Assembly (NCBI GenBank): GCA_001179505.1
Contig: CDMY01000409.1
Coordinates: forward strand, 1 to 64,000
Reading direction: 5' to 3'
DNA length: 64,000 bases
Source of the DNA: Vitrella brassicaformis CCMP3155
Taxonomy: Eukaryota; Protista; Chromerida
The notes beneath the pieces are model-generated. The model had not been told where the DNA came from, did no database searches, and saw nothing but the letters and a program-made list of their open reading frames with translations. The position numbers and the translations under genes were made by a program. Position 1 is the stretch's first letter, and each line of letters opens with the position of its first letter. This document shows, piece by piece, positions 9,923-55,528 of this stretch.

Positions 9923-10208
9923 AGACACACCTGAAATGCACAGGCAGGCAGGCAGGCAGGCAGGCAGACGGTGGTGTGCGTCGGGGAGAGCATTTCCTCT
10001 GTGTGTCAGGCGAACCTCACGGAAGGTTGAAGCGTCATTCGCTTTGCGGAATGAATGGCAATAAGGCGACTGGGGATGGAGGCTTCATTGCTGCGGAGAG
10101 GGGATGAATCCGTAGCTCCAACGCTCTCTTCAGATCTCCTGGCTTATGCGAGCTTAGAAGCTCCATGTGTTGACAGCTTTGCGTAACGGCTGGGGCGGCT
10201 GACGGACG

Positions 10209-11824
10209 ATGGCCACCCAGGAGCATCCCGTCAGCCACCTGTTTGTCGGCAGCCGAGGGCATCTGCCCGATATCGTCACGGCGGCCCGCCGCAGAGCCAC
10301 ATCGCGGCGCATCCGGGATGCTTTCACCATAGCCGAGCTGCGCAACCGCCTCGCCAAGTCACTGAGCCGTGATGGGGACGGCATCAACACCCCACAGCTG
10401 CAGCTGCTGCGGTTCGACCCATCGCTGGGCATGGGTGACCTCATGGCGGCGGTGTGGATAGCCGAGGAGGGCGGGCGGTGGGATGAGACGGGGGAGGTGC
10501 TGCAGCTGGCCAGCCAGTGTGGCTACTGTCAGCTGCCCCTCAACCTCACGGCCGATGACATCAACACACACGCCAGCAAGACGGTAAGGTACGCACACAG
10601 ATGGGGGCGGGAGGGAACAAACAGGCCTCATCCATTCCTCTCTCTGTGTCTGTGTCTGTGTGTGTGGTGTGGTGTGGTGTGGTGTGGTGTGATGTGGTGT
10701 AGGCGTATGGATCGGTAGCTCGTGTGTTGGCGCAGCTGATGCTGGTCGGCCGCCACATCGACTTCGGTGACGGCAGCCGCCTGCAGATCGTCCGTCATGG
10801 CGACGGTGAGGTGCGGGCCATCAAGGACGAGCCCGACTTCGAGCTGGGCGTCGACCCGCCCCTCGCTGCCCACCATCTGTATCAGCGGCACCGACAGCAG
10901 CATGACCCACCAGTGGCCAGCCGCATCTTCTACCTGGGCGCCACCGGCAGATGGGTGTCGGGCGGCGACCCCTACGCCGATGCCTCAGTGTCGTCGTTGG
11001 CCAAGCACATAGTCCTCAGCCACTTCTACCTGACTCACCAGACCAATGACACATCGATATCACTCAACAGGTAACGACACGTCAATGGCACCAGTGGTTG
11101 CGTATGTGATTGTGCGTGTGTGTGTGGTTGGTTCAGGCGTGTTGGTGGCGGCCGTCTGGATGGCCTCCTCATCCAGTCGCCCCACACACCGGTGACCGGA
11201 TGCACCACCACTCTCAGCTCGGACGATTGTGTGCGAGGTCTGATGCTCACCGACAGCAGCCACCCCTTCGTCGCGTGGATTACCATATCGGTTGCGGGCC
11301 TCGGCACCGGTCAGGCCGACAGACAGGCAGCTTCGCTGCTGTCAAGTTATCAGTGTTATCTGTCTGTCACTGTCTGCAGTGGTGGTTTTTGTTCGGACCA
11401 CCGAGGCGCCTGTGCGGGAGAGTGGTGCCTTCAAGGACCGCTTCCCAGTGACCACTCAGCTGGCCCGTGTGGCGCTGGGACGAGTGGCGCCATACGTCTT
11501 CGACGGCCAAGTAGACGATGACATTGACGATGATGACGGTGCGGTCAGGGGAGGGAGGGACACACACACATTGTGGCAATGGATGGATGGCTTCTCTGTC
11601 TGTCTTTGTGTGTGGTGTAGATTCCGACGGCCATGGCGGCGGCTGGGATGATATGGATGACGACAGCGACGGAGAGGACAGCGGAGGTACACACACGAGG
11701 GGAAGGGACACACACAGCCGACGACAGATGGACCCACACCGACCCGTATCACATTCAGGTTTGTGTGTGTGTCTGCATGACAGGTGACAATGCATCTGAA
11801 GCCGAGGAGGAGAATGCTGACTGA
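10209..11824 (+). CDS. Uncharacterised multi-copy family, copy 2, 6 exons, apparently intact
   Basis: Exon peptides HPVSHLFVGSRGHLPDIV..., RVLAQLMLVGRHIDFGDG..., RVGGGRLDGLL..., FKDRFPVTTQLARVALG, DSDGHGGGWDD, GDNASEAEEENAD*, joined by GT-AG introns. Confidence 0.8.
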
Positions 11825-12191
11825 TATCACTCAATCAACGCTGCGGCACCACAGGTACTCACACACACCAGACAGTGGGCCAGAGTCTTCTATCTTTATG
11901 TATTGTCCTGTCTGTGTGTGTGTGTGTTGGCAGGGTGTCTGGAGTGCTCTCTGTGGCTGCTGGCTGCCCCGAATCCACTCATGCCTGTCTGTGGTAGAGA
12001 GAGATCGTATACCGCCCACTCTGTAGAGAGACCAGCTGCTGACACATGACTGCCCCAATGGCTGTGGGTGGGCGACCTGTCTGCATTGCCCCGTCCAGCC
12101 TCTCTGCACCTCCCTCCCTCCCTCCCTCTCTCTCTCTGCGTTGATGTCTACCTCTCCTGCTGCCTGGCTGCTTGGCTGGGGGGGGGGGGGG

Positions 12192-12491
12192 NNNNNNNNN
12201 NNNNNNNNNNNNNNNNNNNNNNNNNNNNNNNNNNNNNNNNNNNNNNNNNNNNNNNNNNNNNNNNNNNNNNNNNNNNNNNNNNNNNNNNNNNNNNNNNNNN
12301 NNNNNNNNNNNNNNNNNNNNNNNNNNNNNNNNNNNNNNNNNNNNNNNNNNNNNNNNNNNNNNNNNNNNNNNNNNNNNNNNNNNNNNNNNNNNNNNNNNNN
12401 NNNNNNNNNNNNNNNNNNNNNNNNNNNNNNNNNNNNNNNNNNNNNNNNNNNNNNNNNNNNNNNNNNNNNNNNNNNNNNNNNNNNNNNNNNN
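12192..12491. other. Assembly gap, 300 N
   Basis: N run after poly-G. Confidence 1.
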
Positions 12492-12564
12492 CTTGGTGTG
12501 TTGCCCTCCATTGCTGGCCGGCTTTGACCGCCGCTGTGTGTGTGTGTGTGTGTGAGGCCTGTCT

Positions 12565-12658
12565 GCCTGACCAGCTGCCTATCGACGACGATTATTTTTG
12601 CCGTGCGTACATGACCGACACGCTGCTGCATGCTATCCTGGAGTTTGTACAGAGGTGA
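12565..12658 (+). other. Possible orphan coding exon LPIDDDYFCRAYMTDTLLHAILEFVQR
   Basis: Protein-like reading frame after a CAG acceptor; no parent gene visible, possibly hidden in the gap. Confidence 0.25.
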
Positions 12659-24539: not shown

Positions 24540-24710
24540 CGGCAGGGCGGCGCGGGGGATGGGATACATGGTGTTGCGTGTCGTACATGTGTATTTGGCG
24601 TGGGTGTGTGGGTGGGATGTCGGGACGATGTCATAACCCGACGCAATCGCTTCATGCATACGAGACAGAGAGAGAGAGGGGACGGGTGTGTGGGTGGGAG
24701 AGAGGGAGGG

Positions 24711-25010
24711 NNNNNNNNNNNNNNNNNNNNNNNNNNNNNNNNNNNNNNNNNNNNNNNNNNNNNNNNNNNNNNNNNNNNNNNNNNNNNNNNNNNNNNNNNN
24801 NNNNNNNNNNNNNNNNNNNNNNNNNNNNNNNNNNNNNNNNNNNNNNNNNNNNNNNNNNNNNNNNNNNNNNNNNNNNNNNNNNNNNNNNNNNNNNNNNNNN
24901 NNNNNNNNNNNNNNNNNNNNNNNNNNNNNNNNNNNNNNNNNNNNNNNNNNNNNNNNNNNNNNNNNNNNNNNNNNNNNNNNNNNNNNNNNNNNNNNNNNNN
25001 NNNNNNNNNN
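24711..25010. other. Assembly gap, 300 N
   Basis: N run. Confidence 1.
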
Positions 25011-27810: not shown

Positions 27811-29433
27811 TCATCCGAGCGATGCAGTGTCGTCAGCGCCGTTCTCCTCCTCAGCTGCGGCGTCCTCGCCTGTCAAATAAACACACACACGCACGGGTGT
27901 TGCGGACAGACATGAGATGTGTGTGCCTCTCTTCCTTTGTTGGTACCTCCGCTGCCGTCAGCCATATCGTCACCATCACTGCCGTCTACACCACACACAC
28001 AGAAGGCCCATCCACCACACGCGGTTTCACTCACATGCTTCCGTCTCTCCCCTATCGGTACCATCGTCATCGTCGTCGTAGTCATCGTCTACTTGTCCGT
28101 CGAGCACGAATGGCGCCACCCCCCACCCCAGCGCCACTCGGGCCAGCTGAGTGGTCAAGGGGAGGCGGTCCTTGAAGGCACGACCAGCACCAGCCACAGG
28201 CGCCTCGGTCGTCGCGACATACACCCGCACTGTAGACAGACGAGAGAGAACAACACATGTGGCAGTTGACGAGCAGAGCCGCCTGTCTGTCGGCCTGACC
28301 GGTGCCGTCCCCCCAATCCGATATGGCAATCCACGCGACAAAGTTGTGGCTGCTGTTGGTCAGCACCAGGTAACGCACACGACCGTCCCGGCTGAATGTC
28401 GTCGAGCAGCCGGCCACCGGTGTGTGGGGCGACTGGGTGAGGAGGTCATCCAGACGGCCGCCACCAACATACCTGAGCCAACCACACAGACACACACACA
28501 ATCAAACACACGCCCATCTCGCCACTTGGTGTGCTACCTGTTGAGCTGGATCAATGTGCGATTGATCGGGTGAGTCGCGTGGAACTGATCGACGATCTTG
28601 TTCTTGGCGAATGACGACAATGACGCATCCGTGGTCGGGGCGTCCGACACCCATCCGCCGGTGGCGCCCAAGTACTTGATGCGTCTGGCCACTGGTGGGT
28701 CATGCTCTAGTCGGTGCTGCTGATACAGATGGTGGGCGGCGAGGGGCGGGTTGACGTCCAGCCGGAAGCGGGGCTCGTCCTTGATGGCCCGCATCTCACC
28801 ATTGGGATGGCGGAAGATCCGCAGGCAGCTGCCGTCACCGAAGGCCACGTGTCGGCCGACCACCATCAGCTGCGCCAACACACGGGGAAACGATCTATAC
28901 GCCTACACCACACCACATACACACAGACAGACAGACAGACAGACGGACAGGGAGAAGAATGAGTGAGGCCTTTCTGTTCTCTCACCGCCCCTCTCTGTGT
29001 GTGTGTGCCTTACCGTCTTGCTGGCGTGTGTGTTGATGTCATCGGCCGTGAGGTTGACGGGCAGCTGACAGAAGCCGCAGTCACTGGCCCACTGCAGCAC
29101 CTCAGCCACCTCGTCCCACTTCTGCTCTTCCACCAGCCAGATGGCCGCCAGCAGCAGCTGCGCCCCGACCACCGACTGAGTGTCGAAGGTCAGCACCGCG
29201 TCCAGCCGCGTGCCGTCAGCGAGGCGAATGCGATGGAGGGAGCGGTTGAGTCGGCTGCGGAGGATCTGGGCAGGGAAGTCGACCTTGCTGAAGAACAGGG
29301 CCGTCCTCCTGATGTTGCCGAGGTCCTTCAGGGTGTGCAGGCCATCGCGCTCGTCCCGATAGACGACGTCGAGCACCTGGCCGTTGATGGCAGGCGACGC
29401 CTCGTCGGTGCTCTTGCTGTTGACCGCACCCAT
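27811..29433 (-). CDS. Uncharacterised multi-copy family, copy 3, with divergent N-terminus MGAVNSK
   Basis: Exon 1 ends LPVNLTADDINTHASKT; the standard exons 2-6 follow, ending GEDAAAEEENGADDTASLG*. Confidence 0.8.
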
Positions 29434-30846: not shown

Positions 30847-31145
30847 GGGACGTCCGTCCACACAGCCAGGCCAATACATATCGACAGCACACATGCAGCG
30901 AGAAAAAGAGAGAGAGAGAGAGATGGAGGAGGCAGCCATTCGTGGGTTGCCATCAGCAGTGATCTGCACCGGTCAGCGGGCTACAAACAGAGAGGACGGC
31001 AGACAGCACTCCGCCACCCTCCTGAGGCCACAACACACACACACACACACACACACAGACAGAGAGGGAGGGATGGCACCAGCCGATGACATTGCAGTGT
31101 GTCCGCGGCGCACCGGTGAGTATTGAGATCGGTCTGTGTGTGTCG

Positions 31146-31845
31146 TCAGGGCGATGCATTGCCGTCACCGCTGCCATCCTCGTGCTCCTCCTCAGCCGAC
31201 ACACCCCCACCTGCCATCGACACAGACACAGACGCACACACGCAGACGTATGATGCGGGTCGGTGTGGAAGGTAAGGCATCTGTGGCGGGGGCGTCTGTG
31301 CCTTCCTCCCTCTCTGTGTACCTCCGCTGTCCTCTCTGTCGCTGCCGTCATCCATATCATCCCAACCGCCGCCATGGCCGTCGGAATCTACACCACACAC
31401 AAAGACAGACAGACAGAGAAGTCCTGCCGTCCATCCATCCAACGCCACCATGTGTCTGTGTGTCCCCTCCCCTCCCCTGTCCGCACCGTCGTCATCCTGC
31501 TGCTGGTCTTCTACCTGGCCGTCAAAGACGTATGGCGCCACACGGGCCAGCGCCACACGGGCCAGCCGAGTGGTCACGGGGAGGCGGTCCTTGAAGGCAC
31601 CACCAGCACCAGCCACAGGCGCCTCGGTCGTCACGACATACACCGACACTGCAGACAGACAGACGAGAGAGAACAACACATGTGGCAGTTGACGAGCAGA
31701 GCTGCCTGTCTGTCGGCCTGACCGTCGCCGTCCCCCAAATTCGAAATGATAGTCCACGCGACGAAGGAGTGGCTGCTGTTGGTCAGCACCAGAACTCGCG
31801 CATCACCGATGTCATCTTCCCCGCTGAGTGTAGTAGTGCACCCGG
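31146..31845 (-). pseudogene. Family copy 4: 3' fragment only, from mid exon 3 to exon 6
   Basis: Begins abruptly at GCTTTLSG. Contains FKDRLPVTTRLARVAL, DSDGHGGGWDD and GGGVSAEEEHEDGSGDGNASP*. Exons 1-2 are absent. Confidence 0.8.
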
Positions 31846-32095
31846 GGAGGCGGAGAGACCGCTGGATACACACATAGCTCGGCAGACAGACCTAAAAGAC
31901 AGACCCACCCCAGCCCCTCAGCCCACAGCCAGCCTGGATGGACCATCGGCAGCTATCCAGGATGGACCATCGGCAGCTATCCATGCAGCCACTTGAATGC
32001 AACCCAGCTACAGGTATTCTCCTGAACACAGACGCACACGCCGGGAGGGCACGGCATCCATTCACACACACATTCCTCCCTCAGTCTATACCGTC
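31845..32095. repeat. About 240-bp near-identical module, also at 36700-36912
   Basis: GGAGAGACCGCTGGATACACACATAG...CCTCCCTCAGTCT is shared. This copy carries an internal tandem duplication of GGATGGACCATCGGCAGCTATCC. Confidence 0.9.
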
Positions 32096-34270
32096 ATCGT
32101 CGCTGTCGTCGTCCTGCTGCTGCTGTACTTGTCCGTCGAAGACATATGGCGCCACTCGCCCCAGCGCCACACGGGCCAGCTGAGGGGTGGCTGGGAAGCG
32201 GTCCTTGAAGGCACCACCTCTCACACCAGCCACAAGTGCCTCGGTCGTCACGACACTAACAAACACTGCAGACAGACAGACAGACAGACAGACAGACGAG
32301 ATTAATGAGCAAAGCTGGCTCTCTGTCGGCCTGACCGGTGGCGTCCCACAAATCCTGAATGGTAATCCACGCGACGAAGCCGTGGCTGCTATCGGTGAGC
32401 ACCAGAAACCGCACACCACCGTGCCAGCCGTCCCGGCTGAATGTGGTGGTGCATCCGGCCCCACTGGTGTGTGGGGCGACTGTATGAGGAGGCCATCCAG
32501 ACGGCCACCACCAACACGCCTGAACCAACAACAGGCACAGATACACAAAATCAGAGACGCACCCATCTCGCCACTGGTGTCGTTGACGTGGCGTCACCTG
32601 TTGAGGAGTATCCGTGTGCGATTGGGCTGGTGAGTCCTGTCGAAGTGGTTGAGGATCTTGTTCTTGGCGAATGACGACACTGATGTATTGGTGGACGGAA
32701 AGCTCGACTCCCATTGGTTGATATCGCCAAAGTAGTCGATCCCGCTCTGCACTGGTGGGTCATGCTGCTGTCGGTGCTGCTGGAACAAGTGGCCGGCAGG
32801 GAGGGGCGGGTCGACGGCCAGCTGGAAGCCGGGCTTGTCCTTGATGGCCCGCACCTCACCGTTGGCATGGCGGAAGATCTGCAGGCAGCTGCCGTCACCG
32901 AAGTCGATGTGGCGGCCGACCACCATGAGCTGCGCCAACACACGGGGAAACGATCTATACGCCTACACCACACCACACACAGACAGACGGAGAGAGAGGA
33001 TGACTGAGGCCTCTCTGTTTTCTCACCCACTGCCCCTCTGTGTGTGCCTTACCGTCTTGTTGGCGTGTGTGTTGATGTCATCTGACATGAGGATGACAGG
33101 CAGCTCACAGTTGCCGCACTGGCTGGCCAGCTGCAGCACCTCCCCCGTCTCATCCCACCGCCCGCCCTCCTCGGCTATGCACACCGCCGCCATGAGGTCG
33201 GCCATCCCCAGCGATGGGTCGAACCGCACCAGCTGCAGCTGTGGGGTGTTGATGCCGTCGCCGTCACGGCTCAGTGAGTGGTCCAGTCGGCTGCGCAGCT
33301 GGTCTGATGAGAAGGCGTCTCTGATGTCTCGTGAGGCTGCCCTCAGCTGCAGTGTGGTGCTGATGTCGGGGATGCGGCAGCGGTCTTCGGCATACAGATG
33401 GGCGAGGGGGTGCTCCTGGCGCCCCCCTGCAGATCGATACACAAGGCACATCTGGTGCATGGCGGTCGGTTGTGTCAGACACACCTGACAATGCTGCTGC
33501 TGCTGCTGCTGCTCTTGCTGCGGGTGGCTGCGGGACGATGCGACGCCGTGGCGGTCGGGCGAGGCGAACAGCTCGTCTACTGCATCGGTCACGATCTGCA
33601 CACACCACACAAACACAAACAACGACATCAACACGGTGCTGTGTTGGCGATTCTACTGGTCTTCTGCCATGCTCACCGCTTTGGTGGTCTGTGTGTCGCC
33701 CCACATGAGCCGCTGCATCCTCAACGTCGTCATGCTCGACTCCAACGCCGACTCGCTAACCGAGCTCTCAGCCACAAGGGCCGCACTCTGACAATGAACA
33801 ATGGGACAAACCCACACAGGCCGTAGATAGGCCATGACACGTGTCGCTTCGGCTCACCCATATGCGGCCCGCTATCTCTTTCTGGTTTGTCTTGCGTGTG
33901 ATGTAGACGGCCGTGGCGGCCAGCAGACGGACATCGCACCCGGCCAAGTCGATGTCACAGATCGACAAGAACTGCACAGACAGACAGACAGACAGACAGA
34001 GAGGGAGGGACAAGCCATTCGATGGCTGGAGGTGTCTGTCTGTGTGTGGCTGGCTGCCCGACTGACCATGAGGTATTTGGCCAATGAGAACAGGCGGCCG
34101 TGGGTGTCCATGCCGGCCGCAGTGAACAGCTTATCCAGACACTCAATGCCGCACACAGAACAATCAGACCTCACAGCCAGCAGCCGCACCGCCCGCATGA
34201 CGGTCGCGTCGCGGCAGCCCAGAGATGAGGCGCTCTTTACTAAGCGATTCACCAACACGGCTGCCACACA
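32008..34270 (-). CDS. Family copy 5, fused downstream of a cyclin C-terminal box; 5' start unresolved
   Basis: Spliced upstream exons read LFTAAGMDTHGRLFSLAKYLM|FLSICDIDLAGCDVRLLAATAVYITRK...IW|SAALVAESSVSESALESSMTTL...KA|IV, matching the Cyclin_C pattern (LAKYLxELSL...PSxIAAAAxYLAR...WTxTL...YSxxxL). They continue into QQQ-HPLAHL and the family core. Confidence 0.65.
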
Positions 34271-35162
34271 TGACAGACATCACAGCACACCTCTGAGGGC
34301 ATCTGTGGTGTGCTGCTGTGTGCAAGTCGGGCGTACCTCTCTGTGCGGCCATTTCATGCTACCGACCTGTTTGTCAGACAAACCGAACACAGAGCATCTC
34401 TTGATTGATCAGTCATCCGGCATTCCCTCTCTTACTGTCCTGCTCGCCTCACCGTCACAGCCGCCATGGTGCCCTGCGATGGGCCTCAGCGATGAGTTGA
34501 AACCATCAGTTTGTGTCTAATGGGGCTCCTGCTGCCCTCTGGAAGGCACCACAATCGCTGAAACAGGCTGCAAGGAACGATCGAATCAGTGCGAGCTGGA
34601 AGATGAGGAACTTTGAATCCCGGCGATGAAGATGGCCTTTTCGTGAGCCGCCAGACTTCTGCACAGGCGTGTTGTGTTCTCATTTGGCGTTGAGTGCCTC
34701 GCCTGGTGCCGTCTGGTTTCGGGCTGCGTCAATCTCGCGGGCCGTGGAGGAGATCTCTGCCAGACTGACTGAGCAGCCGTGAGCAAGGGACCAGAGGGCA
34801 TCCACGGGCAGCCCTGATCTATGTCATTTCGTGGCGTCATTTGTTCTGCAGGTGTGACCTGTGGCATCTGCGCGGACAGCAGGCGGCAGCGGGACCCTTC
34901 AGCAGCAAAAGGGAGGACCGCTGAGCAGACAAGGAGGTCAGATGGATCAAGCAGAGCAGACACGGACTTATCTGCACCATGTGTGTGTGGGTGTGGGTCT
35001 TCGCAGTGTGACGAGATGGAGTCGGCGGCCAGCACAGCAGGGCCAAGGTCAGTGAGCAAACACGAGGGCGGGCACGAACCACCACCTTTGGCTGGCTGCA
35101 GTGCATGGCTGATCGCTGTATACGCCCTGCTTACCTCTGATTGGGGATTCCCTGGCTCATAG

Positions 35163-36318
35163 GTACCGATGCCGACCGTGATGTGTTGGTCGAGTGTGGC
35201 GCCGTGGCGTCGGTCAAGACGCTGCTCCAGTCAGCTGAGCCACCAATGAGACTCACCGGATGCCTGACGATGGCGTTCGTGACTGGAGGTAGACGGCCAC
35301 ACACATCCCATGCTGCCGCGTCACGAGTGAGGTGCTGTGCTGTTTGGTGTGGACCGCCTGTGTGCAGGTAGTCCTGCTCACCTGCAGGCTGTCATCGATG
35401 CTGGTTTAGTTCCTCTGCTCGTCGACGCGGCCAGGGAGGAGCCTTCTGGCACGGCAGCAAGGACCACCGGAATTGTAGCCCGAGGATCACAGCGACAGGT
35501 GGGTATGGCAGCCAGCGATATGCAAGACACACACGGCACACAGCCCCACATTGACGTGTGTGTCTGATTGCGTATCCGTTTGTGCAGATTGAGCATGTGA
35601 TTGAGTGTGGAGGAATTCAGCCCCTTCGTGGCCTGCTCAATGGCGACACGCTCAGGATGCTGTCAGGCTGTCCTAAGGTAGGTCCACACGCACACAGACT
35701 ACACGGAAGTACATGTCCATCGCTAGCCCTCCTACCTGTTGTGTGCTGCCTGTGTGTGTGCATCGGTGCGGGTCGTCAGAAGCAGGCCAACGAGGGCCTC
35801 CCCGAAAACCCCTACTGCAGGCTGGTGGAACAGGTCAGAGGACGAGAGAGAGCGATGGACAGCGGGTACCATTCATTCACACGGCTACCTTGCTCTGACC
35901 TCCGTGCAGGCCGGCGGTGTGGAAAAGTTGGTCGAGCTGCAGGCACACAACGACGGGAACATCGCAGTGCAGGTGGCCTGCCTGCCTGCACGGCACCGTG
36001 TGTGTATGGCACACGACGCGAACACACACTGTCAGTGGGCTGTCTGTCTCTTGTGTGCTCTTGGGTTCATTCATTCAGGCAATGGCGATCCTCATTGACT
36101 ACTTCCCAGCTCGCGTCGACGCACAGCGTCTGGAGGCCTTGATTCAGGCGGGTGTGATTCACGTGGTCCCTGAGCCTGGTGGGGGTGAGGATGACCGGGC
36201 CACCCACGTGAGCGACAGCGATGGCGACGAGGAGGCAGACGGCCAGCTGTATGGCCATGGCGAGGACCAGGAGGAGAAGATAGATAGACAGACGGGGCGC
36301 TTCCTCCATGACGCGTAG
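35163..36318 (+). CDS. Importin-alpha-like ARM-repeat protein, C-terminal half only; 5' part not recognised and possibly degenerate
   Basis: GTDADRDVLVECGAV, GSPAHLQAVIDAGLVPLLV, IEHVIECGGIQPLRGLL and NPYCRLVEQAGGVEKLVELQAH...AMAILIDYF match importin-alpha ARM6-10, followed by an acidic tail. Confidence 0.7.
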
Positions 36319-36699
36319 ATGCGTAGATGCGTGCATTCCTGTGTGCGAATGTCTGTATGTGTAGCTAGCTGGCGAGAGGGAGACGCAATACAAACGCATA
36401 CGGATGTGTGGCTGACTGACCCGACGAGCATCGCGTTGAAGTGGCCAGCCTCTTGCCCGATGGCCGGCCGTGTCTTGATGGAATTTGACTCGTCGCTGAA
36501 CACATTGACTGACACGACCATGGGGCCAAATGAAATGAGACACGTTTCGATGGGATTTGACACGAAAGGACGGTTAGTATTATTCTCACACTTATACATA
36601 CTGGGCAATGTCACGCACATCAGAAAATACATCAACACAACACACCGGACAAAGTCGGCCAGCCATCCATCGGTATGCATCGACTGGTTAGAGGGAGGG

Positions 36700-36912
36700 G
36701 GAGAGACCGCTGGATACACACATAGCTCGGCAGACAGACCTCAAAGACAGACCCACCCCAGCCCCTCAGCCCACAGCCAGCCTGGATGGGGACCGTCGGC
36801 AGCTATCCATGCAGCCACTTGAATGCAACCCAGCTACAGGTATTCTCCTGAACACAGACGCACACGCCGGGAGGGCACGGCATCCATTCACACACACATT
36901 CCTCCCTCAGTC
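36700..36912. repeat. Module paralogous to 31845-32095
   Basis: Near-identical sequence. Confidence 0.9.
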
Positions 36913-38255
36913 TGTACCGTCATCGTCGCTGTCGTCGTCCTGCTGCTGCTGTACTTGTCCGTCGAAGACATATGGCGCCACTCGCGCTAGCGCCACACGG
37001 GCCAGCTGAGTGGTCACGGGGAAGCGGTCCTTGAAGGCGCCACTCACACCAGCCACAGGCGCCTCGGTCGTCAGGACACTAACCATCACTGCAGACAGAC
37101 AGACGAGATTTAATGAGCAAAGCTGCCTGTCTGTCGGCCTGACCGGTGGCGTCCCACAAATCCTGAATGGCAATCCACGTGACGGACTCGTGGCTGCTGT
37201 TGGTCAGCACCAGAAACTGCACACCACCGTGCCAGCCGTCCCGGCTGATTGTGGTGGAGCAGCCGGCCACTGCTGTGTGGGGTGACTGGGTGAGGAGGCC
37301 AGCCAGACGGCCGCCACCAACACGCCTGAACCAACCACACACACACACACACACACAATCACACACGGACCCCTCTCGCCACTTGGGCCACTGGTGTGTC
37401 GTCACCTGTTGAGTGATATCGATGTGTCATTGGTCTGTTGAGTGTGGCAGAAGTGGTTGAGTATCTTGTCCTTGGCGAACGACGACAGCGACGCGTCGGT
37501 TGACAGGAGATCGCTCGACCCCCATCTGCCAAAGACGTCAGAGTAGAAGATGCCGCTCCGCACTGGTGGGTCATGCTGCTGTCGGTGCTGCTGATACAGA
37601 TGGCCGGCGGGGAGGGGCTGGTCGACGTCCAGCTGGAAGCCGGGCTCGTCCTTGATGGCCCGCACCTCACCATTGGCACGGCGGAAGATCCGCAGGCAGC
37701 TGCCGTCACCGAAGTCGATGTGGCGGCCGACCACCATGAGCTGCGCCAACACACGGGGAAACGATCTATACGCCTACACCACACCACACACAGACAGACA
37801 GACAGACAGACAGAGGATGAGGCCTCTGTGTTCTCTCCCATCCCCGTGTGTGTGTGCCTTACCGTCTTGTTGGCGTGTGTGTTGATGTCATCGGCCGTGA
37901 GGTTGAGGGGCAGCGTGCAGTAGCGGCACTGGCTGGCCCACTGCAGCACCTCCCCCGTCTCATCCCACCGCCCGCCCTTCTCGGCTATGCACACCGCCGC
38001 CATGAGCTCACCCATCCCCAGCGATGGGTCGAAGCGCACCAGCTGCAGCCGCTGAGTGTTGATGCCATCGCCGTCACGGCTCAGTGAGTCGGCGAGGCGG
38101 TTGCGCAGCTCAGCTACGGTGAAGGCAGCCCGGATGCGCCGCGATGTGGCCCTCAGGCGGGCAACTGTGACGATGTCGGGCAGATGGCCTCGGCTGCCAA
38201 CGAACAAGTAGCTGACGGGATGCTCCTGGGCGGCCATCGTCCCATCAGCCATCAT
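36834..38255 (-). CDS. Family copy 6, lacking exons 5-6; ends GEYL* if spliced or GTD* at 36907 if not
   Basis: MMADGTMAAQEHPVSYLFVGSRGHLPDIV..., followed by exons 2-4 and then the shared 3' module. Confidence 0.75.
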
Positions 38256-38330
38256 GCCAAGCCGTCAACACATGCCTACGATGAAATCCGCCGAAAAATG
38301 GGCTCGGCATGATCGAGTTTATTCAGCCCA

Positions 38331-38630
38331 NNNNNNNNNNNNNNNNNNNNNNNNNNNNNNNNNNNNNNNNNNNNNNNNNNNNNNNNNNNNNNNNNNNNNN
38401 NNNNNNNNNNNNNNNNNNNNNNNNNNNNNNNNNNNNNNNNNNNNNNNNNNNNNNNNNNNNNNNNNNNNNNNNNNNNNNNNNNNNNNNNNNNNNNNNNNNN
38501 NNNNNNNNNNNNNNNNNNNNNNNNNNNNNNNNNNNNNNNNNNNNNNNNNNNNNNNNNNNNNNNNNNNNNNNNNNNNNNNNNNNNNNNNNNNNNNNNNNNN
38601 NNNNNNNNNNNNNNNNNNNNNNNNNNNNNN
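38331..38630. other. Assembly gap, 300 N
   Basis: N run. Confidence 1.
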
Positions 38631-40130
38631 ACCTCCGCTGTCCTCTCCGTCGCTGTCGTCGTCCATATCATCCCAACCGCCGCCATGGCCGTCGGAATCT
38701 ACACCACACAGACAGACAGAGAAGAAATGCCATCCATCCATCCATGACCACCATGTGTGTGTCCCATCCTCCCCTGACCGCACCGTCGTCATCGTCATCC
38801 TGCTGCTGTTGTACTTGTCCGTCGAAGACGTATGGCGCCACTCGCCCCAGCGCCACACGGGCCAGCTGAGTGGTCACGGGGTAGCGGTCCTTGAAAGGCG
38901 CATCCTCACTCACACGAGCCGCAGGCGCCTCGGTTGTCTTAACAATAACCATTACTGCAGACAATGACAGTCAGAAAGAAAGGAGAAATGTGGCAGTTGA
39001 CGAGCAAAGCTGCCTGTCTATCGACCTGACCGGTGCCGTCCCCCCAAACCGAAATGCCAATCCACGCGACGAAGTCGTGGCTGGTGTTGGTGAGCACCAG
39101 AATCCGCCAACGACCACCCCCGCTGAATGTGGTGGTGCATCCGGCCACCGGTGTGTGGGGCGACTGGGTGAGGAGGCCATCCAGACGGCCGCCACCAACA
39201 CGCCTGAACCAACCACACACACACATACACACACACACACATACACACACATACACACACATACAGTAATCAGACCACTCTCGCCACTGGTGGCATTGAT
39301 GTGTTACCTGTTGAGTCGTATCCTTGTGCCAGTGGTCTGGTGGGTCTTGCTGAAGTGTTGGAAGATGATGTCCTTGGCCAACGAAGACACTAACGCATCG
39401 GTGTACGGGCCAGCGAACGACACCCATTCGCGGGCGGTGTCCCAGTGGATGCAGCTGGCCACTGGTGGGTCATGCTCTAGTCGGTGCCGCTGACACAGAT
39501 GGTCGGCAGGGAGGAGCGGGTTGATCGTCAGCTCGAAGCCGGGCTCGTCCTTGATGGCCCGCACCTCACCATTGGCACGGCGGAAGATCCGCAGGCAGCT
39601 GCCGTCACCGAAGTCGATGTGGCGGCCGACCACCATCAGCTGCGCCAACACACGAGCTACCGATCTAAACGCCTAGACCACACCACACACACAGACAGAG
39701 AAGAATGAATGGGGCCTCTCTGTTCTCTCCCCGCCCCTCTGTGTGTGTGCCTTACCGTCTTGTTGGCGTGTGTGCGAATGTCATTGGCTGTGAGGTTGAC
39801 GGGCAGTGTGCAGTAGCGGCACTGGCTGGCCCACTGCAGCACCTCCCGCGTCTCGTCCCACCGCCCGCCCTCCTCGGCGATCCACACCGCCGCCATGAGG
39901 TCACCCATCCCCAGCGATGGGTCGAACTGCACCAGCTGCAGCCGCTGAGTGTTGATGCCATCTCCGTCACGGCTCAGTGAGTTGGCGAGGCGGTTGCGCA
40001 GCTCGGCTACGGTGAAGGCAGCCCGGATGCGCCGCGATGTGGCCCTCAGGCGGGAAACCGTGACGATGTCGGGCAGATGGCCTCGGCTGCCGACAAACAA
40101 GTAGTTGACGGGGTGCTCCTGGGCAGCCAT
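38631..40130 (-). CDS. Family copy 7; 3' end runs into the gap
   Basis: MAAQEHPVNYLFVGSRGHLPDIV..., with exons 2-5 present. Confidence 0.8.
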
Positions 40131-40506
40131 CGTCCCGTCAGCCGCCCCAGCCGTCACGCCAAGCCGTCAACACATCGCTACGACGGAAATCACATGCGCT
40201 GGTACTCGGTTGTGTTCTCATTGGTCAGGAGCTGGCCCAGGAGCGTCTGGGGGTGTCGCTCGACAGTCGATCTGGTCATGTGGGCCGGGTGGGGGCAAGG
40301 GGAGACTTCAAGCCGTTTCGTCTACAGACTGCATGACTGTATTTTTCTGCGCATGTTTCTTCCTTTTTCATTCACAGATGTACATATCTATGTACAGTCA
40401 TTGAGACCCGTCCACACGCAGTGCTCCCAAGCGACAAAGCGAAACAAGGACAGCAGAATGAATGAATGGGTGAGAGGAATCGAACGCACAGACAATGAAC
40501 GCCATC

Positions 40507-53737: not shown

Positions 53738-55528
53738 TCAGTCGCCGCTCTCCGCCTCAGCTGCTGCATCCTCACCTGTCGAGTGCACAGGACACACACA
53801 TAGGTGAAAGTCATTCGGGTCGACGTGAGGGCCTCTGTGGTGTGTGTGGCTGTGTACCTCCGCTGCCGTCATCCATATCGTCACCCTCGTCGGAATCTGC
53901 AGACCACTCACAGACACAGAGAGAGAAGGCACTTCATCCATCCATCCATCCATCCATGTGTCTGTGTGTCAGTACCATCGTCGTTATCGTCATCCTGCTG
54001 CTGCTGCTGCTGCTGTACTTGTCCGTCGAATACGAATGGCGCCACCGCCCCCAAGGCCACACGAGCCAGCTGAGTGGTCAACGAGAAGCGGTGCTTGAAG
54101 GGACCCCCCTCACAGACAGCCGCCTCAGTTGTCACCACAGACATACCCACTGCACATGAGGGGCAGAAGACCACGCGACGTATGACCAGCGGAGCATCCC
54201 CTCTGTCAGTCTGACCGTCGTTGTTTCCTGCTCCGCTGATAACAATCCATGCGACAAAGGGGTGGCTGCCGTCGGTCTGCACCAGCTGTCGCACATTGCC
54301 GTGCAACCCGATTGCGGTAGTGCAGCCTGCCACCGGTGTGTGGGGCGACTCGGTCAGCAGGCCATCCAGACGGCCGCCACCAACGTACCTGAACCAAGCA
54401 CAGCCAAAGACACAGGCAAAGACCCACCCTCGTGCCTTCAGTGCCATTGATGTGTTGTCACCTGTTGAGCATTATCGATGTGTAATGGGTCTGATGAGTC
54501 AGCCTGAAGTGGTCGAAGACCATGCACTTGGCAAACGACGACACTGACGCATCGGTGTCCTGGCCACCGTCGGTGGATATCCATCTACCGCCCTCGCCCC
54601 AGTAGTAGATGCCCTCACGCACCGGCGGGTCGTGTGGCTGCCGGTGCTGCTGGTACAGATGACCGGCAGGCAGGAGCGGGTCGACCTCCAGCTGGAAGCC
54701 CGGCTCGTCCTTGATGGCCCGCACCTCATCGCCATGCTGGAACAGCTGCAGGCAGCTGTCGTCACTGAAGTGGACGTGGCGGCCGACCATCTTGAGCTGC
54801 GCCAACACACGGGGAGCCGACACATACGCCTACACACAGGACCACACAGACAGAGAGAATGAGGCCCTCTCCCTCCCCTCCCCGCCCCTCTGTTTGCTGG
54901 CTCACCGTTTTGCTTGCGTGTGTGTTGATGTCATCGGCTGTGAGGATGACAGGCAGCTCACAGCTGTCGCACTGCCCCGCCACCTCAATCACCTCGCCGA
55001 TCTCGTCCCATGGCCCCTCCTCCACCACACACACAGCCGCCAAGAGATCATGTGTGCCGAACTGGTCGTCGTCGAACCGCAGCAGCTGCACTTGCTGCCC
55101 ATTCACCGCCCGCCGCAGCCCCGCTTGTGAGCCCAGCGAGTGGCGGAGCCGATCTCTCAGCTGGGCCGCTCCGAAGAGGTCTCTCAGCCACGTGCAGGTG
55201 GCCCTCAGCCGCAGGACGTCCTTGATGCTGCTGAAGAGGTAGAAGGTGCGGCGGCCGACGAAGATATACGAGAAGGGGTGCTGCTGCTGCTGCTGCTGCT
55301 GCTGCGGTGGCTGCATCTGGGTAGCTATGATGTGCTCGACGACAGCCTGCACAGAGCGACAGAGCCGACAGAGGATCGTGTGCATCAAGCATGCTGCTCA
55401 TTGATCTGTGTGCTGCTCACCTCGTTCGATGCTCAGACGGACAGATCAGCATGCAGAGAACTGAATGCACCACCACCACCACCACCTTTACCACCACCAG
55501 CAGCAGCGGCAGATGAGGAGGCCGCCAT
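53738..55528 (-). CDS. Family copy 8, with A/G-rich and Q-rich N-terminus, apparently intact
   Basis: QQQHPFSYIFVGRRTFYLFSSIKDVLRLRAT..., standard exons 2-6, ending GEDAAAEAESGD*. Start is inferred. Confidence 0.8.

What the first reader, a model, noticed from the sequence alone, without database searches (positions are those of the whole stretch)
33400..34270. Cyclin C-terminal box spliced in frame to the uncharacterised family domain
Seen: phase-compatible GT-AG junctions give ...LFSLAKYLM|FLSICDIDLAGCDVRLLAATAVYITRK..IW|SAALVAESSVSESALESSMTTL..KA|IVTDAVDELF..QQQ..HPLAHL. Established: this follows the Cyclin_C consensus, and in animals cyclin F combines a cyclin fold (substrate receptor) with an F-box. 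Inference: an independently evolved cyclin plus F-box-like plus novel-domain chimera that could recruit cell-cycle substrates.
Basis: partly seen in the sequence, partly recalled or inferred. Interest (0 to 1): 0.75.

Follow-up and report, generated by a model that had tools for sequence, protein, structure and literature searches.

The report
Damaged cyclin-fusion gene copy in Vitrella
This is one of about 17 copies of a gene, found only in the alga Vitrella brassicaformis, that joins a very divergent cyclin to a large Vitrella-only protein family; the join is real and already in public databases, but this copy carries two frameshifts and a deletion and is probably decaying.

Summary
They are exactly the exons of the public Vitrella brassicaformis CCMP3155 model CEM11099.1 / A0A0G4FDR3, which UniProt names "Cyclin C-terminal domain-containing protein". 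That model scores 30.4 bits on Pfam Cyclin_C (cut-off 22).

About 17 paralogous loci share the same exon chain. Intact paralogs carry a full two-box A/B-like cyclin core (ESM Atlas model TM 0.77-0.79 to cyclin A/B). The core is fused at the start codon of a family with at least 151 genomic matches, found almost only in Vitrella.

The last cyclin helix and the start of the family domain lie in one open frame, so this is a true fusion.

"F-box-like" is only weakly supported. Pfam finds nothing. hhalign matches only the second half of the F-box (probability 12%, but above 150 of 150 shuffles). The family domain folds with confidence but matches no known fold (best Z 5.2).

This copy is damaged:
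- a unique 1-nt deletion in exon 2;
- a unique 2-nt insertion in the penultimate exon;
- a deletion of about 340 bp, shared with one sister copy, that removes the middle of the N-terminal cyclin box.

The scan already reported the same architecture on a paralog (s1-218514). No binding partner or transcript evidence was found. Interest is modest.

The parts
34453..34467 (-). Exon 1: ancestral start codon and first 5 codons (M-A-A-V-T), donor GT at 34452-34451
   Evidence: Conserved ATGGCGGC..ACG|GTGAGG in 13 of 15 paralogs; N-terminus of public paralog models P0005, P0010 and P0011
34337..34366 (-). Exon 2 (30 nt; 31 nt in every paralog). A private 1-nt deletion (G lost between 34344 and 34343) puts exons 1-2 out of frame with the cyclin exons. 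An ATG at 34352-34350 becomes in-frame only because of the deletion.
   Evidence: Alignment of the window with 15 paralogs: all have GCAGCAGAGAG|GT, the window has GCA-CAGAGAG|GT
34067..34260 (-). Cyclin exon Ea: N-box helices 1-2 joined directly to the end of the N-box and the first helix of the C-box. A genomic deletion of about 340 bp (junction near 34174-34170) removed about 50 codons, including a whole exon and two introns.
   Evidence: DNA alignment (deletion shared only with C678, the P0005 locus). The public model starts at the internal ATG at 34111.
33858..33971 (-). Cyclin exon Eb (38 aa): C-box helices 1'-2'
   Evidence: Cyclin_C E 0.035 on its own; 19 genomic copies at 76-100% identity
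33677..33787 (-). Cyclin exon Ec (37 aa): C-box helices 3'-4'. Reading into the following intron meets a stop after 7 codons.
   Evidence: 18 genomic copies
33490..33595 (-). First part of exon Ed: last cyclin C-box helix (IVTDAVDELF..) and a poly-Q linker. Present only in cyclin-bearing paralogs.
   Evidence: The Cyclin_C alignment of P0007 runs to residue 111, which is 21 residues into this exon. In one search only cyclin-bearing loci match Ed residues 1-57.
33427..33489 (-). 63-nt junction intron, in frame and without a stop; marks the fusion point
   Evidence: Spliced in public model P0007; ORF 33634-33023 is continuous
33053..33426 (-). Start of the family domain (GRQEHPLAHL..). It corresponds to the M-A-A-Q-E-H-P start of stand-alone family genes. 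The first ~45 residues are the possible worn F-box.
   Evidence: stand-alone copies at 38243 and 40136 start with ATG at this position, with stops upstream; hhalign
32598..32962 (-). Family-domain exon Ef
32336..32519 (-). Penultimate family exon with a private 2-nt insertion (GG within 32462-32459) that shifts the frame. The public model reads on in the wrong frame.
   Evidence: Alignment with 15 paralogs: all have GT--GGCCGG, the window has GTGGGGCCGG. P0007 departs from all paralogs at this point.
32081..32265 (-). Last family exon (..TTEA..FKDRFP..VAPYVFDGQ, acidic tail), stop codon at 32083-32081
31146..31757 (-). Orphan duplicate of the family C-terminal exons. The public model splices part of it on as a chimeric tail.
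   Evidence: (repeats D3, D5)

Best explanation
The locus is a decaying copy of a gene-fusion subfamily specific to Vitrella. Shown: a short, very divergent A/B-type cyclin of about 230 aa (two cyclin boxes) became fused by its 3' end to the start codon of a family gene. That family has at least 151 genomic matches, an alpha/beta domain of about 350 aa with no known fold, and an acidic tail. The fused unit then spread to about 17 loci, together with a neighbouring ARM-repeat-like gene. Inferred for intact paralogs such as CEM10013.1: the cyclin core is a docking module, for a CDK or for an RxL-type partner through the conserved R-A-V-L helix-1 motif, and it brings the family domain to that partner. 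The family N-terminus may be a worn F-box, which would tie the protein to Skp1. For this copy: the middle helices of the N-terminal cyclin box are deleted, the ancestral start is out of frame, and the C-terminal third of the family domain is frameshifted. At most a truncated protein (C-terminal cyclin box plus a partial family domain) could be made. The copy most likely does not work as a cyclin.
For: Organism and public model; exact exon map. Cyclin_C above the Pfam cut-off on the window's own model (30.4 bits) and on 13 of 13 subfamily proteins. A full two-box cyclin in the intact paralog P0008, residues 1-240: 27 of the 30 nearest ESM Atlas clusters carry Cyclin_N plus Cyclin_C and the other 3 carry Cyclin_N alone (best score 0.94, 173-175 shared features). 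The Atlas model aligns 216-217 residues to cyclin A and B-like clusters at TM 0.77-0.79. Cyclin_N is sub-threshold but at the expected place (18.5 bits, profile 26-89). Fusion: the last C-box helix and the family start share one stop-free frame. Stand-alone family genes start MAAQEHP where the fused copy reads GGRQEHP. The same exon chain occurs at about 17 loci, and 12 public fused models exist. Damage: a private -1 deletion, a private +2 insertion and a ~340-bp in-frame deletion. Other copies are decaying too, for example an in-frame TAG at C973.
Against: I found no transcript evidence: no MMETSP peptide covers the cyclin part and no encoding contig is on record. The two small indels could be assembly errors, although neither is a simple one-base homopolymer slip. 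An ATG created by the -1 shift (34352-34350) could rescue translation of the cyclin exons. The ~340-bp deletion is kept in frame in two copies, which hints that it is tolerated. dN/dS of the two cyclin exons among paralogs is about 0.6, so constraint is weak and the module's function is uncertain even in intact copies. AlphaFold2 on the shallow paralog alignment failed (pLDDT 43.7). No partner (CDK, Skp1) was tested.
Confidence: 0.7

Rival explanations
1. This locus encodes a working, independently evolved cyclin-F-like adaptor. In this reading the cyclin box, an F-box-like motif and a novel domain together recruit cell-cycle substrates to an SCF ligase.
For: Cyclin_C is real. The family N-terminus resembles the second half of Vitrella F-boxes more than any of 150 shuffles does. 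ESM Atlas lists F-box clusters at 0.84 for a family member.
Against: This copy has two frameshifts and lacks N-box helices 3-4. Pfam finds no F-box in 72 of 73 members. hhalign probability is only 12% and the LPxE half of the box does not align. The Atlas score of 0.84 is below the tool's noise guide. The domain order is the reverse of cyclin F.
Confidence: 0.08
2. The two small indels are assembly or sequencing errors, and the copy is an intact member of the fusion subfamily. It would still lack the middle of the N-terminal cyclin box.
For: The public assembly is a short-read draft of 1064 scaffolds (PMC4501334). The +2 insertion lies in a run of G. Exons Eb and Ec are clean and close to the paralog consensus.
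Against: The -1 deletion is not in a homopolymer (GCAGCAG to GCACAG). A two-base gain is unusual for Illumina data. Two independent errors in one gene are unlikely. Other paralogs show clear decay (stop in Ec at C973; truncated copies at C675, C288 and C973:42k).
Confidence: 0.15
3. The cyclin exons and the family exons belong to separate mRNAs. In this reading a short stand-alone cyclin gene lies next to a family gene, and the fused models are annotation artefacts.
For: Public models P0001 and P0089 end in the retained intron after Ec and are cyclin-only. The gene models are Augustus predictions that use RNA-seq only as hints. No transcript evidence was found.
Against: The fifth helix of the C-box is encoded at the start of exon Ed, in the same stop-free frame as the family domain. 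The family start codon is absent in fused copies and present in stand-alone ones. Junction phases are conserved at about 17 loci. An earlier follow-up on a paralog calls that gene expressed (s1-218514; I did not verify this).
Confidence: 0.06
4. The cyclin resemblance is a chance match of a helical region.
For: BLASTP against a canonical Vitrella cyclin exon finds nothing. phmmer and profile searches against PDB sequences find no cyclin.
Against: Cyclin_C is above the curated cut-off in 13 of 13 proteins. Cyclin_N sub-threshold hits lie directly upstream, in the right order. Atlas feature and structure hits are almost all cyclins, with TM 0.77-0.79 over 216-217 residues.
Confidence: 0.01

Closest known systems
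A/B-type cyclins (Pfam Cyclin_N PF00134 + Cyclin_C PF02984)
   Same: Intact paralogs have a two-box helical core. Cyclin_C is above the cut-off, Cyclin_N is weak but in the expected position, and an R-A-V-L motif lies where MRAIL sits on helix 1. The Atlas model superposes on cyclin A and B-like clusters.
   Different: There is no N-terminal extension or destruction box. The sequences are too divergent for pairwise detection. The core is fused to a ~350-aa foreign domain. In this window's copy N-box helices 3-4, the main CDK interface in canonical cyclins, are deleted.
Cyclin F (FBXO1), an F-box protein with a cyclin domain
   Same: It combines a cyclin fold with, possibly, an F-box-type motif in one polypeptide, so the cyclin box could act as a docking surface rather than a CDK activator.
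   Different: The order is reversed (cyclin first). The F-box is unproven: only its second half aligns (probability 12%). The origin is independent and Vitrella-only. An extra alpha/beta domain of unknown fold and an acidic tail are present.
Public paralog models CEM10013.1, CEM10031.1 and CEM29749.1 (UniProt 'Cyclin C-terminal domain-containing protein')
   Same: The exon chain and architecture are the same, with 71-79% identity to the window's model.
   Different: They lack the window's two private indels. CEM10013.1 keeps the full N-terminal box, while CEM29749.1 shares the ~340-bp deletion.
Adaptin/COPI appendage platform and other TBP-like alpha+beta domains
   Same: The C-terminal ~130 residues of the family domain show a similar helix-on-sheet arrangement (Z 4.3-5.2, rmsd 3.2-4.0 over 98-105 residues).
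   Different: These Z values are within the tool's stated noise range (typical best Z is 7-8 for unmatched models). Identity is 6-12%. There is no basis for claiming membership.

Membership tests
Cyclin, C-terminal box (PF02984) | Profile match above Pfam's gathering score | tested here: met
   The window's own public model P0007 scores 30.4 bits against a cut-off of 22, E 4e-7, covering profile 21-116 of 119. 13 of 13 subfamily proteins pass.
Cyclin, N-terminal box (PF00134) | Five-helix N-terminal box detected by profile or by fold | tested here: not met
   For this copy: no Cyclin_N hit on P0007 or P0005, and the helix 3-4 coding sequence is deleted. For intact paralogs the result is inconclusive to positive: best 18.5 bits against a cut-off of 23, but the Atlas model aligns residues 5-229 to Cyclin_N+Cyclin_C clusters at TM 0.77-0.79.
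Functional cyclin | Binds and activates a CDK | not testable with these tools
   No multimer prediction or assay was available. The single-chain AF2 model of P0001 was unusable (pLDDT 43.7).
F-box (PF00646 / PF12937) | A ~45-aa three-helix motif detected by profile | tested here: inconclusive
   Pfam F-box-like hits 1 of 73 members at E 0.2. The genome scan finds no hit at a family locus. hhalign against 12 Vitrella F-boxes gives probability 12%, P 0.0024, over 29 columns covering only the second half of the box. The score of 26.2 exceeds 150 of 150 column shuffles, whose maximum is 17.1.
F-box | Binds Skp1 | not testable with these tools
   No assay or complex prediction was possible.
Cyclin F-like architecture | F-box N-terminal to the cyclin domain | tested here: not met
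   Here the cyclin core comes first and the putative F-box follows it.
Vitrella expanded family (unnamed; no Pfam) | Homology over the ~350-aa domain with its conserved motifs (QC..C.LP, HDPPV, QSPHTP..GC, TTE, FKDRFP) | tested here: met
   Exon Ed gives at least 151 genomic matches. 85 database proteins match, E down to 1e-266 and beyond. Alignment A3. In this copy the QSPHTP..GC region is broken by the +2 insertion.

The most novel reading that the evidence does not exclude
Vitrella independently built a 'reversed cyclin F'. In this reading a divergent cyclin core is fused to a worn F-box and a new alpha/beta domain. The intact paralogs would link CDK or RxL-motif partners to an SCF-type ligase, or to whatever the at least 151-match family domain binds, and the ~17-copy expansion would reflect diversifying selection on targets.
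Probability: 0.12. Interest if true: 0.6.

Novelty: new variant of a known kind. Interest (0 to 1): 0.3.

Why it matters
Cyclin folds reused as docking modules outside the CDK cycle are rare, and cyclin F is the textbook case. A second, independent and amplified fusion in a free-living relative of the apicomplexans would show how cell-cycle parts are recruited into lineage-specific, fast-evolving families. It would also give a handle on a Vitrella family with at least 151 genomic matches, unknown function and no recognisable fold. For this particular locus the value is mainly annotational. The public model CEM11099.1 is a chimera read through a frameshift, and should be treated as a probable pseudogene, not as a cyclin.

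Tried and rejected
- Exon-by-exon Pfam scan: only one sub-threshold Cyclin_C hit, too short to decide. I used the public proteins that the HMMER representative search and the word search returned.
- AlphaFold2 of the cyclin-only paralog P0001 with 13 paralogs as the alignment: pLDDT 43.7, unusable, so it was not sent to fold search.
- phmmer and profile searches against PDB sequences with P0001, A2 and A3: no cyclin hit and no hit for the family domain.
- BLASTP of P0008 against a canonical Vitrella cyclin exon: nothing.
- Foldseek against PDB, plus two VIA-align searches, with the confident family-domain model: nothing above noise.
- Search for MMETSP or other transcripts of the cyclin part: none. 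Exact-protein contig look-up: none.
- Literature: no paper describing this family. The genome paper never mentions cyclin.
- Per-paralog integrity survey by tblastn: too noisy to count intact copies, so it was not used for that.
- The idea that the family is TE-borne was considered and not pursued. The copies have conserved introns and sit in tandem gene clusters, and no TE domain was seen.

Full report
WHAT IS THERE

The window is contig C409 of a 72.70-Mb assembly in 1064 contigs. Database names identify it as Vitrella brassicaformis CCMP3155 (assembly CDMY01000001-1064 in PMC4501334).

- Ea, 34260-34067
- Eb, 33971-33858
- Ec, 33787-33677
- Ed, 33595-33053
- three further exons, down to the stop codon at 32083-32081

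All junctions are GT-AG and phase-compatible. It is in frame and has no stop, so exon Ed is one continuous ORF either way (33634-33023).

Instead I used proteins returned by the databases. One of them, P0007 (CEM11099.1 / A0A0G4FDR3, 598 aa), maps residue for residue onto these same exons.

IS IT A CYCLIN?

- Exon by exon, only Eb touches Cyclin_C (E 0.035, 14.6 bits).
- A HMMER search of 1.84 billion representatives with Ea found two Vitrella proteins. A word search with one of them found 85 relatives.
- The window's own model P0007 gives Cyclin_C at 30.4 bits (cut-off 22), E 4e-7, residues 6-111 against profile 21-116 of 119.
- All 13 subfamily proteins pass the cut-off.
- UniProt already names them "Cyclin C-terminal domain-containing protein".
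- Full-length paralogs (P0008 and others) also have an N-terminal box. Cyclin_N is sub-threshold (best 18.5 bits against 23) but lies at the expected place (profile 26-89, directly upstream).
- For P0008 residues 1-240, 27 of the 30 nearest ESM Atlas clusters carry Cyclin_N plus Cyclin_C and the other 3 carry Cyclin_N alone (best score 0.94). The Atlas's own model aligns 216-217 residues to cyclin A and B-like clusters at TM 0.77-0.79.
- My own AlphaFold2 run on 13 paralogs failed (pLDDT 43.7).
- Pairwise or PDB sequence searches see nothing.

The module is therefore a very divergent cyclin, detectable only by profile, language-model features and fold.

IS IT ONE GENE?

- The Cyclin_C alignment of P0007 runs 21 residues into exon Ed. 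The fifth helix of the C-terminal box is therefore encoded in the same stop-free frame as the start of the family domain.
- In one search, Ed residues 1-57 match only at cyclin-bearing loci. The rest of the family matches from about residue 58 onward.
- Stand-alone family genes in this same window (starts at 38243 and 40136) begin ATG-GCG-GCT-CAG-GAG-CAC (MAAQEHP), with stops upstream. The fused copy reads GGRQEHP at that position. The fusion point is thus the family gene's start codon.
- The same exon chain, with the same exon lengths and phases, recurs at about 17 loci (19 copies of Eb, 18 of Ec).
- Twelve public models of 545-712 aa are fused.
- Against this, two public models (P0001, P0089) stop in the retained intron after Ec, and the models are Augustus predictions with RNA-seq used only as hints.
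- I found no transcript evidence of my own. An earlier follow-up of this scan on a paralog (s1-218514) calls that gene expressed; I could not check this.

THIS COPY IS DAMAGED

Three lesions stand out against 15 paralogs:

1. Exon 2 (34366-34337) has lost one G (GCAGCAGAGAG to GCA-CAGAGAG). The ancestral start (34467, or the ATG at 34357) now runs into a stop a few codons into Ea. An ATG at 34352-34350 falls in frame only because of this shift and could give a partial rescue.
2. About 340 bp are missing between mid-exon 3 and the start of exon 5, in frame. This removes about 50 codons, including a whole exon and two introns: N-box helices 3-4 and part of helix 5. Only the C678 copy (P0005) shares this deletion.
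3. The penultimate exon has two extra G (GT--GGCC to GTGGGGCC, at 32462-32459). This breaks the conserved QSPHTP..AGCTTT..LVLTDSSH stretch.

The public model CEM11099.1 copes in three ways. It starts at an internal Met (34111). It reads 50 residues in the wrong frame. It then splices past the true stop into an orphan family fragment at 31649-30984.

Other copies are decaying too: an in-frame TAG in Ec at C973, and truncated copies at C675, C288 and C973:42k. dN/dS over Eb plus Ec among the paralogs is about 0.6 (median dN 0.09, dS 0.16, 75 codons). Constraint is therefore weak.

THE FAMILY DOMAIN AND THE F-BOX QUESTION

- Exon Ed gives at least 151 genomic matches.
- All named database relatives are from Vitrella. 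The rest are four short JGI metagenome contigs and one MMETSP transcript.
- No Pfam family recurs across the members.
- AlphaFold2 on 73 members gives a confident model (pLDDT 82.5, pTM 0.82).
- Foldseek finds nothing at E <= 0.001.
- VIA-align's best result is Z 5.2 (adaptin appendage, rmsd 4.0 over 105 residues). That is within the noise range the tool states. I treat the fold as unassigned.
- For the F-box, Pfam gives 1 of 73 members at E 0.2, and the genome scan with PF12937 hits no family locus.
I therefore aligned 12 genuine Vitrella F-boxes and compared profiles. hhalign places the second half of the F-box (the ..RL..VCR.FR.. part) on the family's N-terminus (P0022 residues 20-48), with probability 12% and P 0.0024.
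- The score of 26.2 beats 150 of 150 column-shuffled controls (median 10.6, maximum 17.1) and the reversed control (14.9).
- The LPxE half of the box does not align.

I conclude that the F-box reading is suggestive but not established.

HOW IT MOST LIKELY WORKS

Shown: the fusion architecture, its amplification, and the damage to this copy.

Inferred: in intact paralogs the cyclin core serves as a docking module, for a CDK or for an RxL-type partner through the R-A-V-L helix-1 motif, which sits where MRAIL lies in cyclin A. That placement is my own reading, consistent with the Pfam alignment start, and was not tested. The core would be tethered to the family domain, and the family N-terminus might bind Skp1. 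In this copy the N-terminal box cannot fold as a cyclin box, so canonical CDK binding is very unlikely.

COMPARISON AND NOVELTY

The closest known relatives are A/B-type cyclins for the fold and cyclin F for the idea. Here the domain order is reversed, the F-box is unproven, and there is an extra domain of unknown fold. The domain call is already public through automatic annotation, and this scan has already reported the architecture on a paralog. No paper describes it. I class the subfamily as a new variant of a known kind, and this locus as a decaying member of it. Interest is 0.3.

Noticed in passing
window 35100-36320, + strand: An ARM-repeat-like gene lies head-to-head with the fusion gene (Pfam Arm E 0.007 and 0.045, sub-threshold). 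Its sequence is also found upstream of most paralog loci, so it seems to have been duplicated together with the fusion gene.
   Followed up: partly
window 28000-29300, 36900-38250, 38800-40150, 54000-55300 (- strand) and 10200-10600 (+ strand): Tandem cluster of stand-alone members of the same expanded family, without a cyclin part. The copies at 38243 and 40136 start MAAQEHP.
   Followed up: partly
window 30984-31757, - strand: Orphan duplicate of the family's last exons, just downstream of the true stop. The public model CEM11099.1 splices it on as a chimeric tail.
   Followed up: yes
window about 38330-38474: A run of N (read as X in translation) lies just upstream of the stand-alone family gene at 38243. 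It is an assembly gap or a withheld stretch.
   Followed up: no
window 12070-12584 and 24584-24900: Long microsatellite-like arrays with an 8-bp period (136 overlapping copies in repeat family D1). They coincide with local dips in GC content.
   Followed up: no
window 33975-34000 and 32268-32295 (introns): (CTGT)n tracts at the 3' ends of introns, and CA/GACA-rich 5' ends.
   Followed up: no
G000:C973:218203-218310 (L022): A paralog of exon Ec carries an in-frame TAG. Copies at C675, C288 and C973:42k are truncated. The subfamily is in birth-and-death flux.
   Followed up: partly
P0084 (909 aa, contig of 141068 bp): A distant family member carries two family domains, each followed by TPR repeats. 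This is another fusion of the family domain with a protein-interaction module.
   Followed up: no
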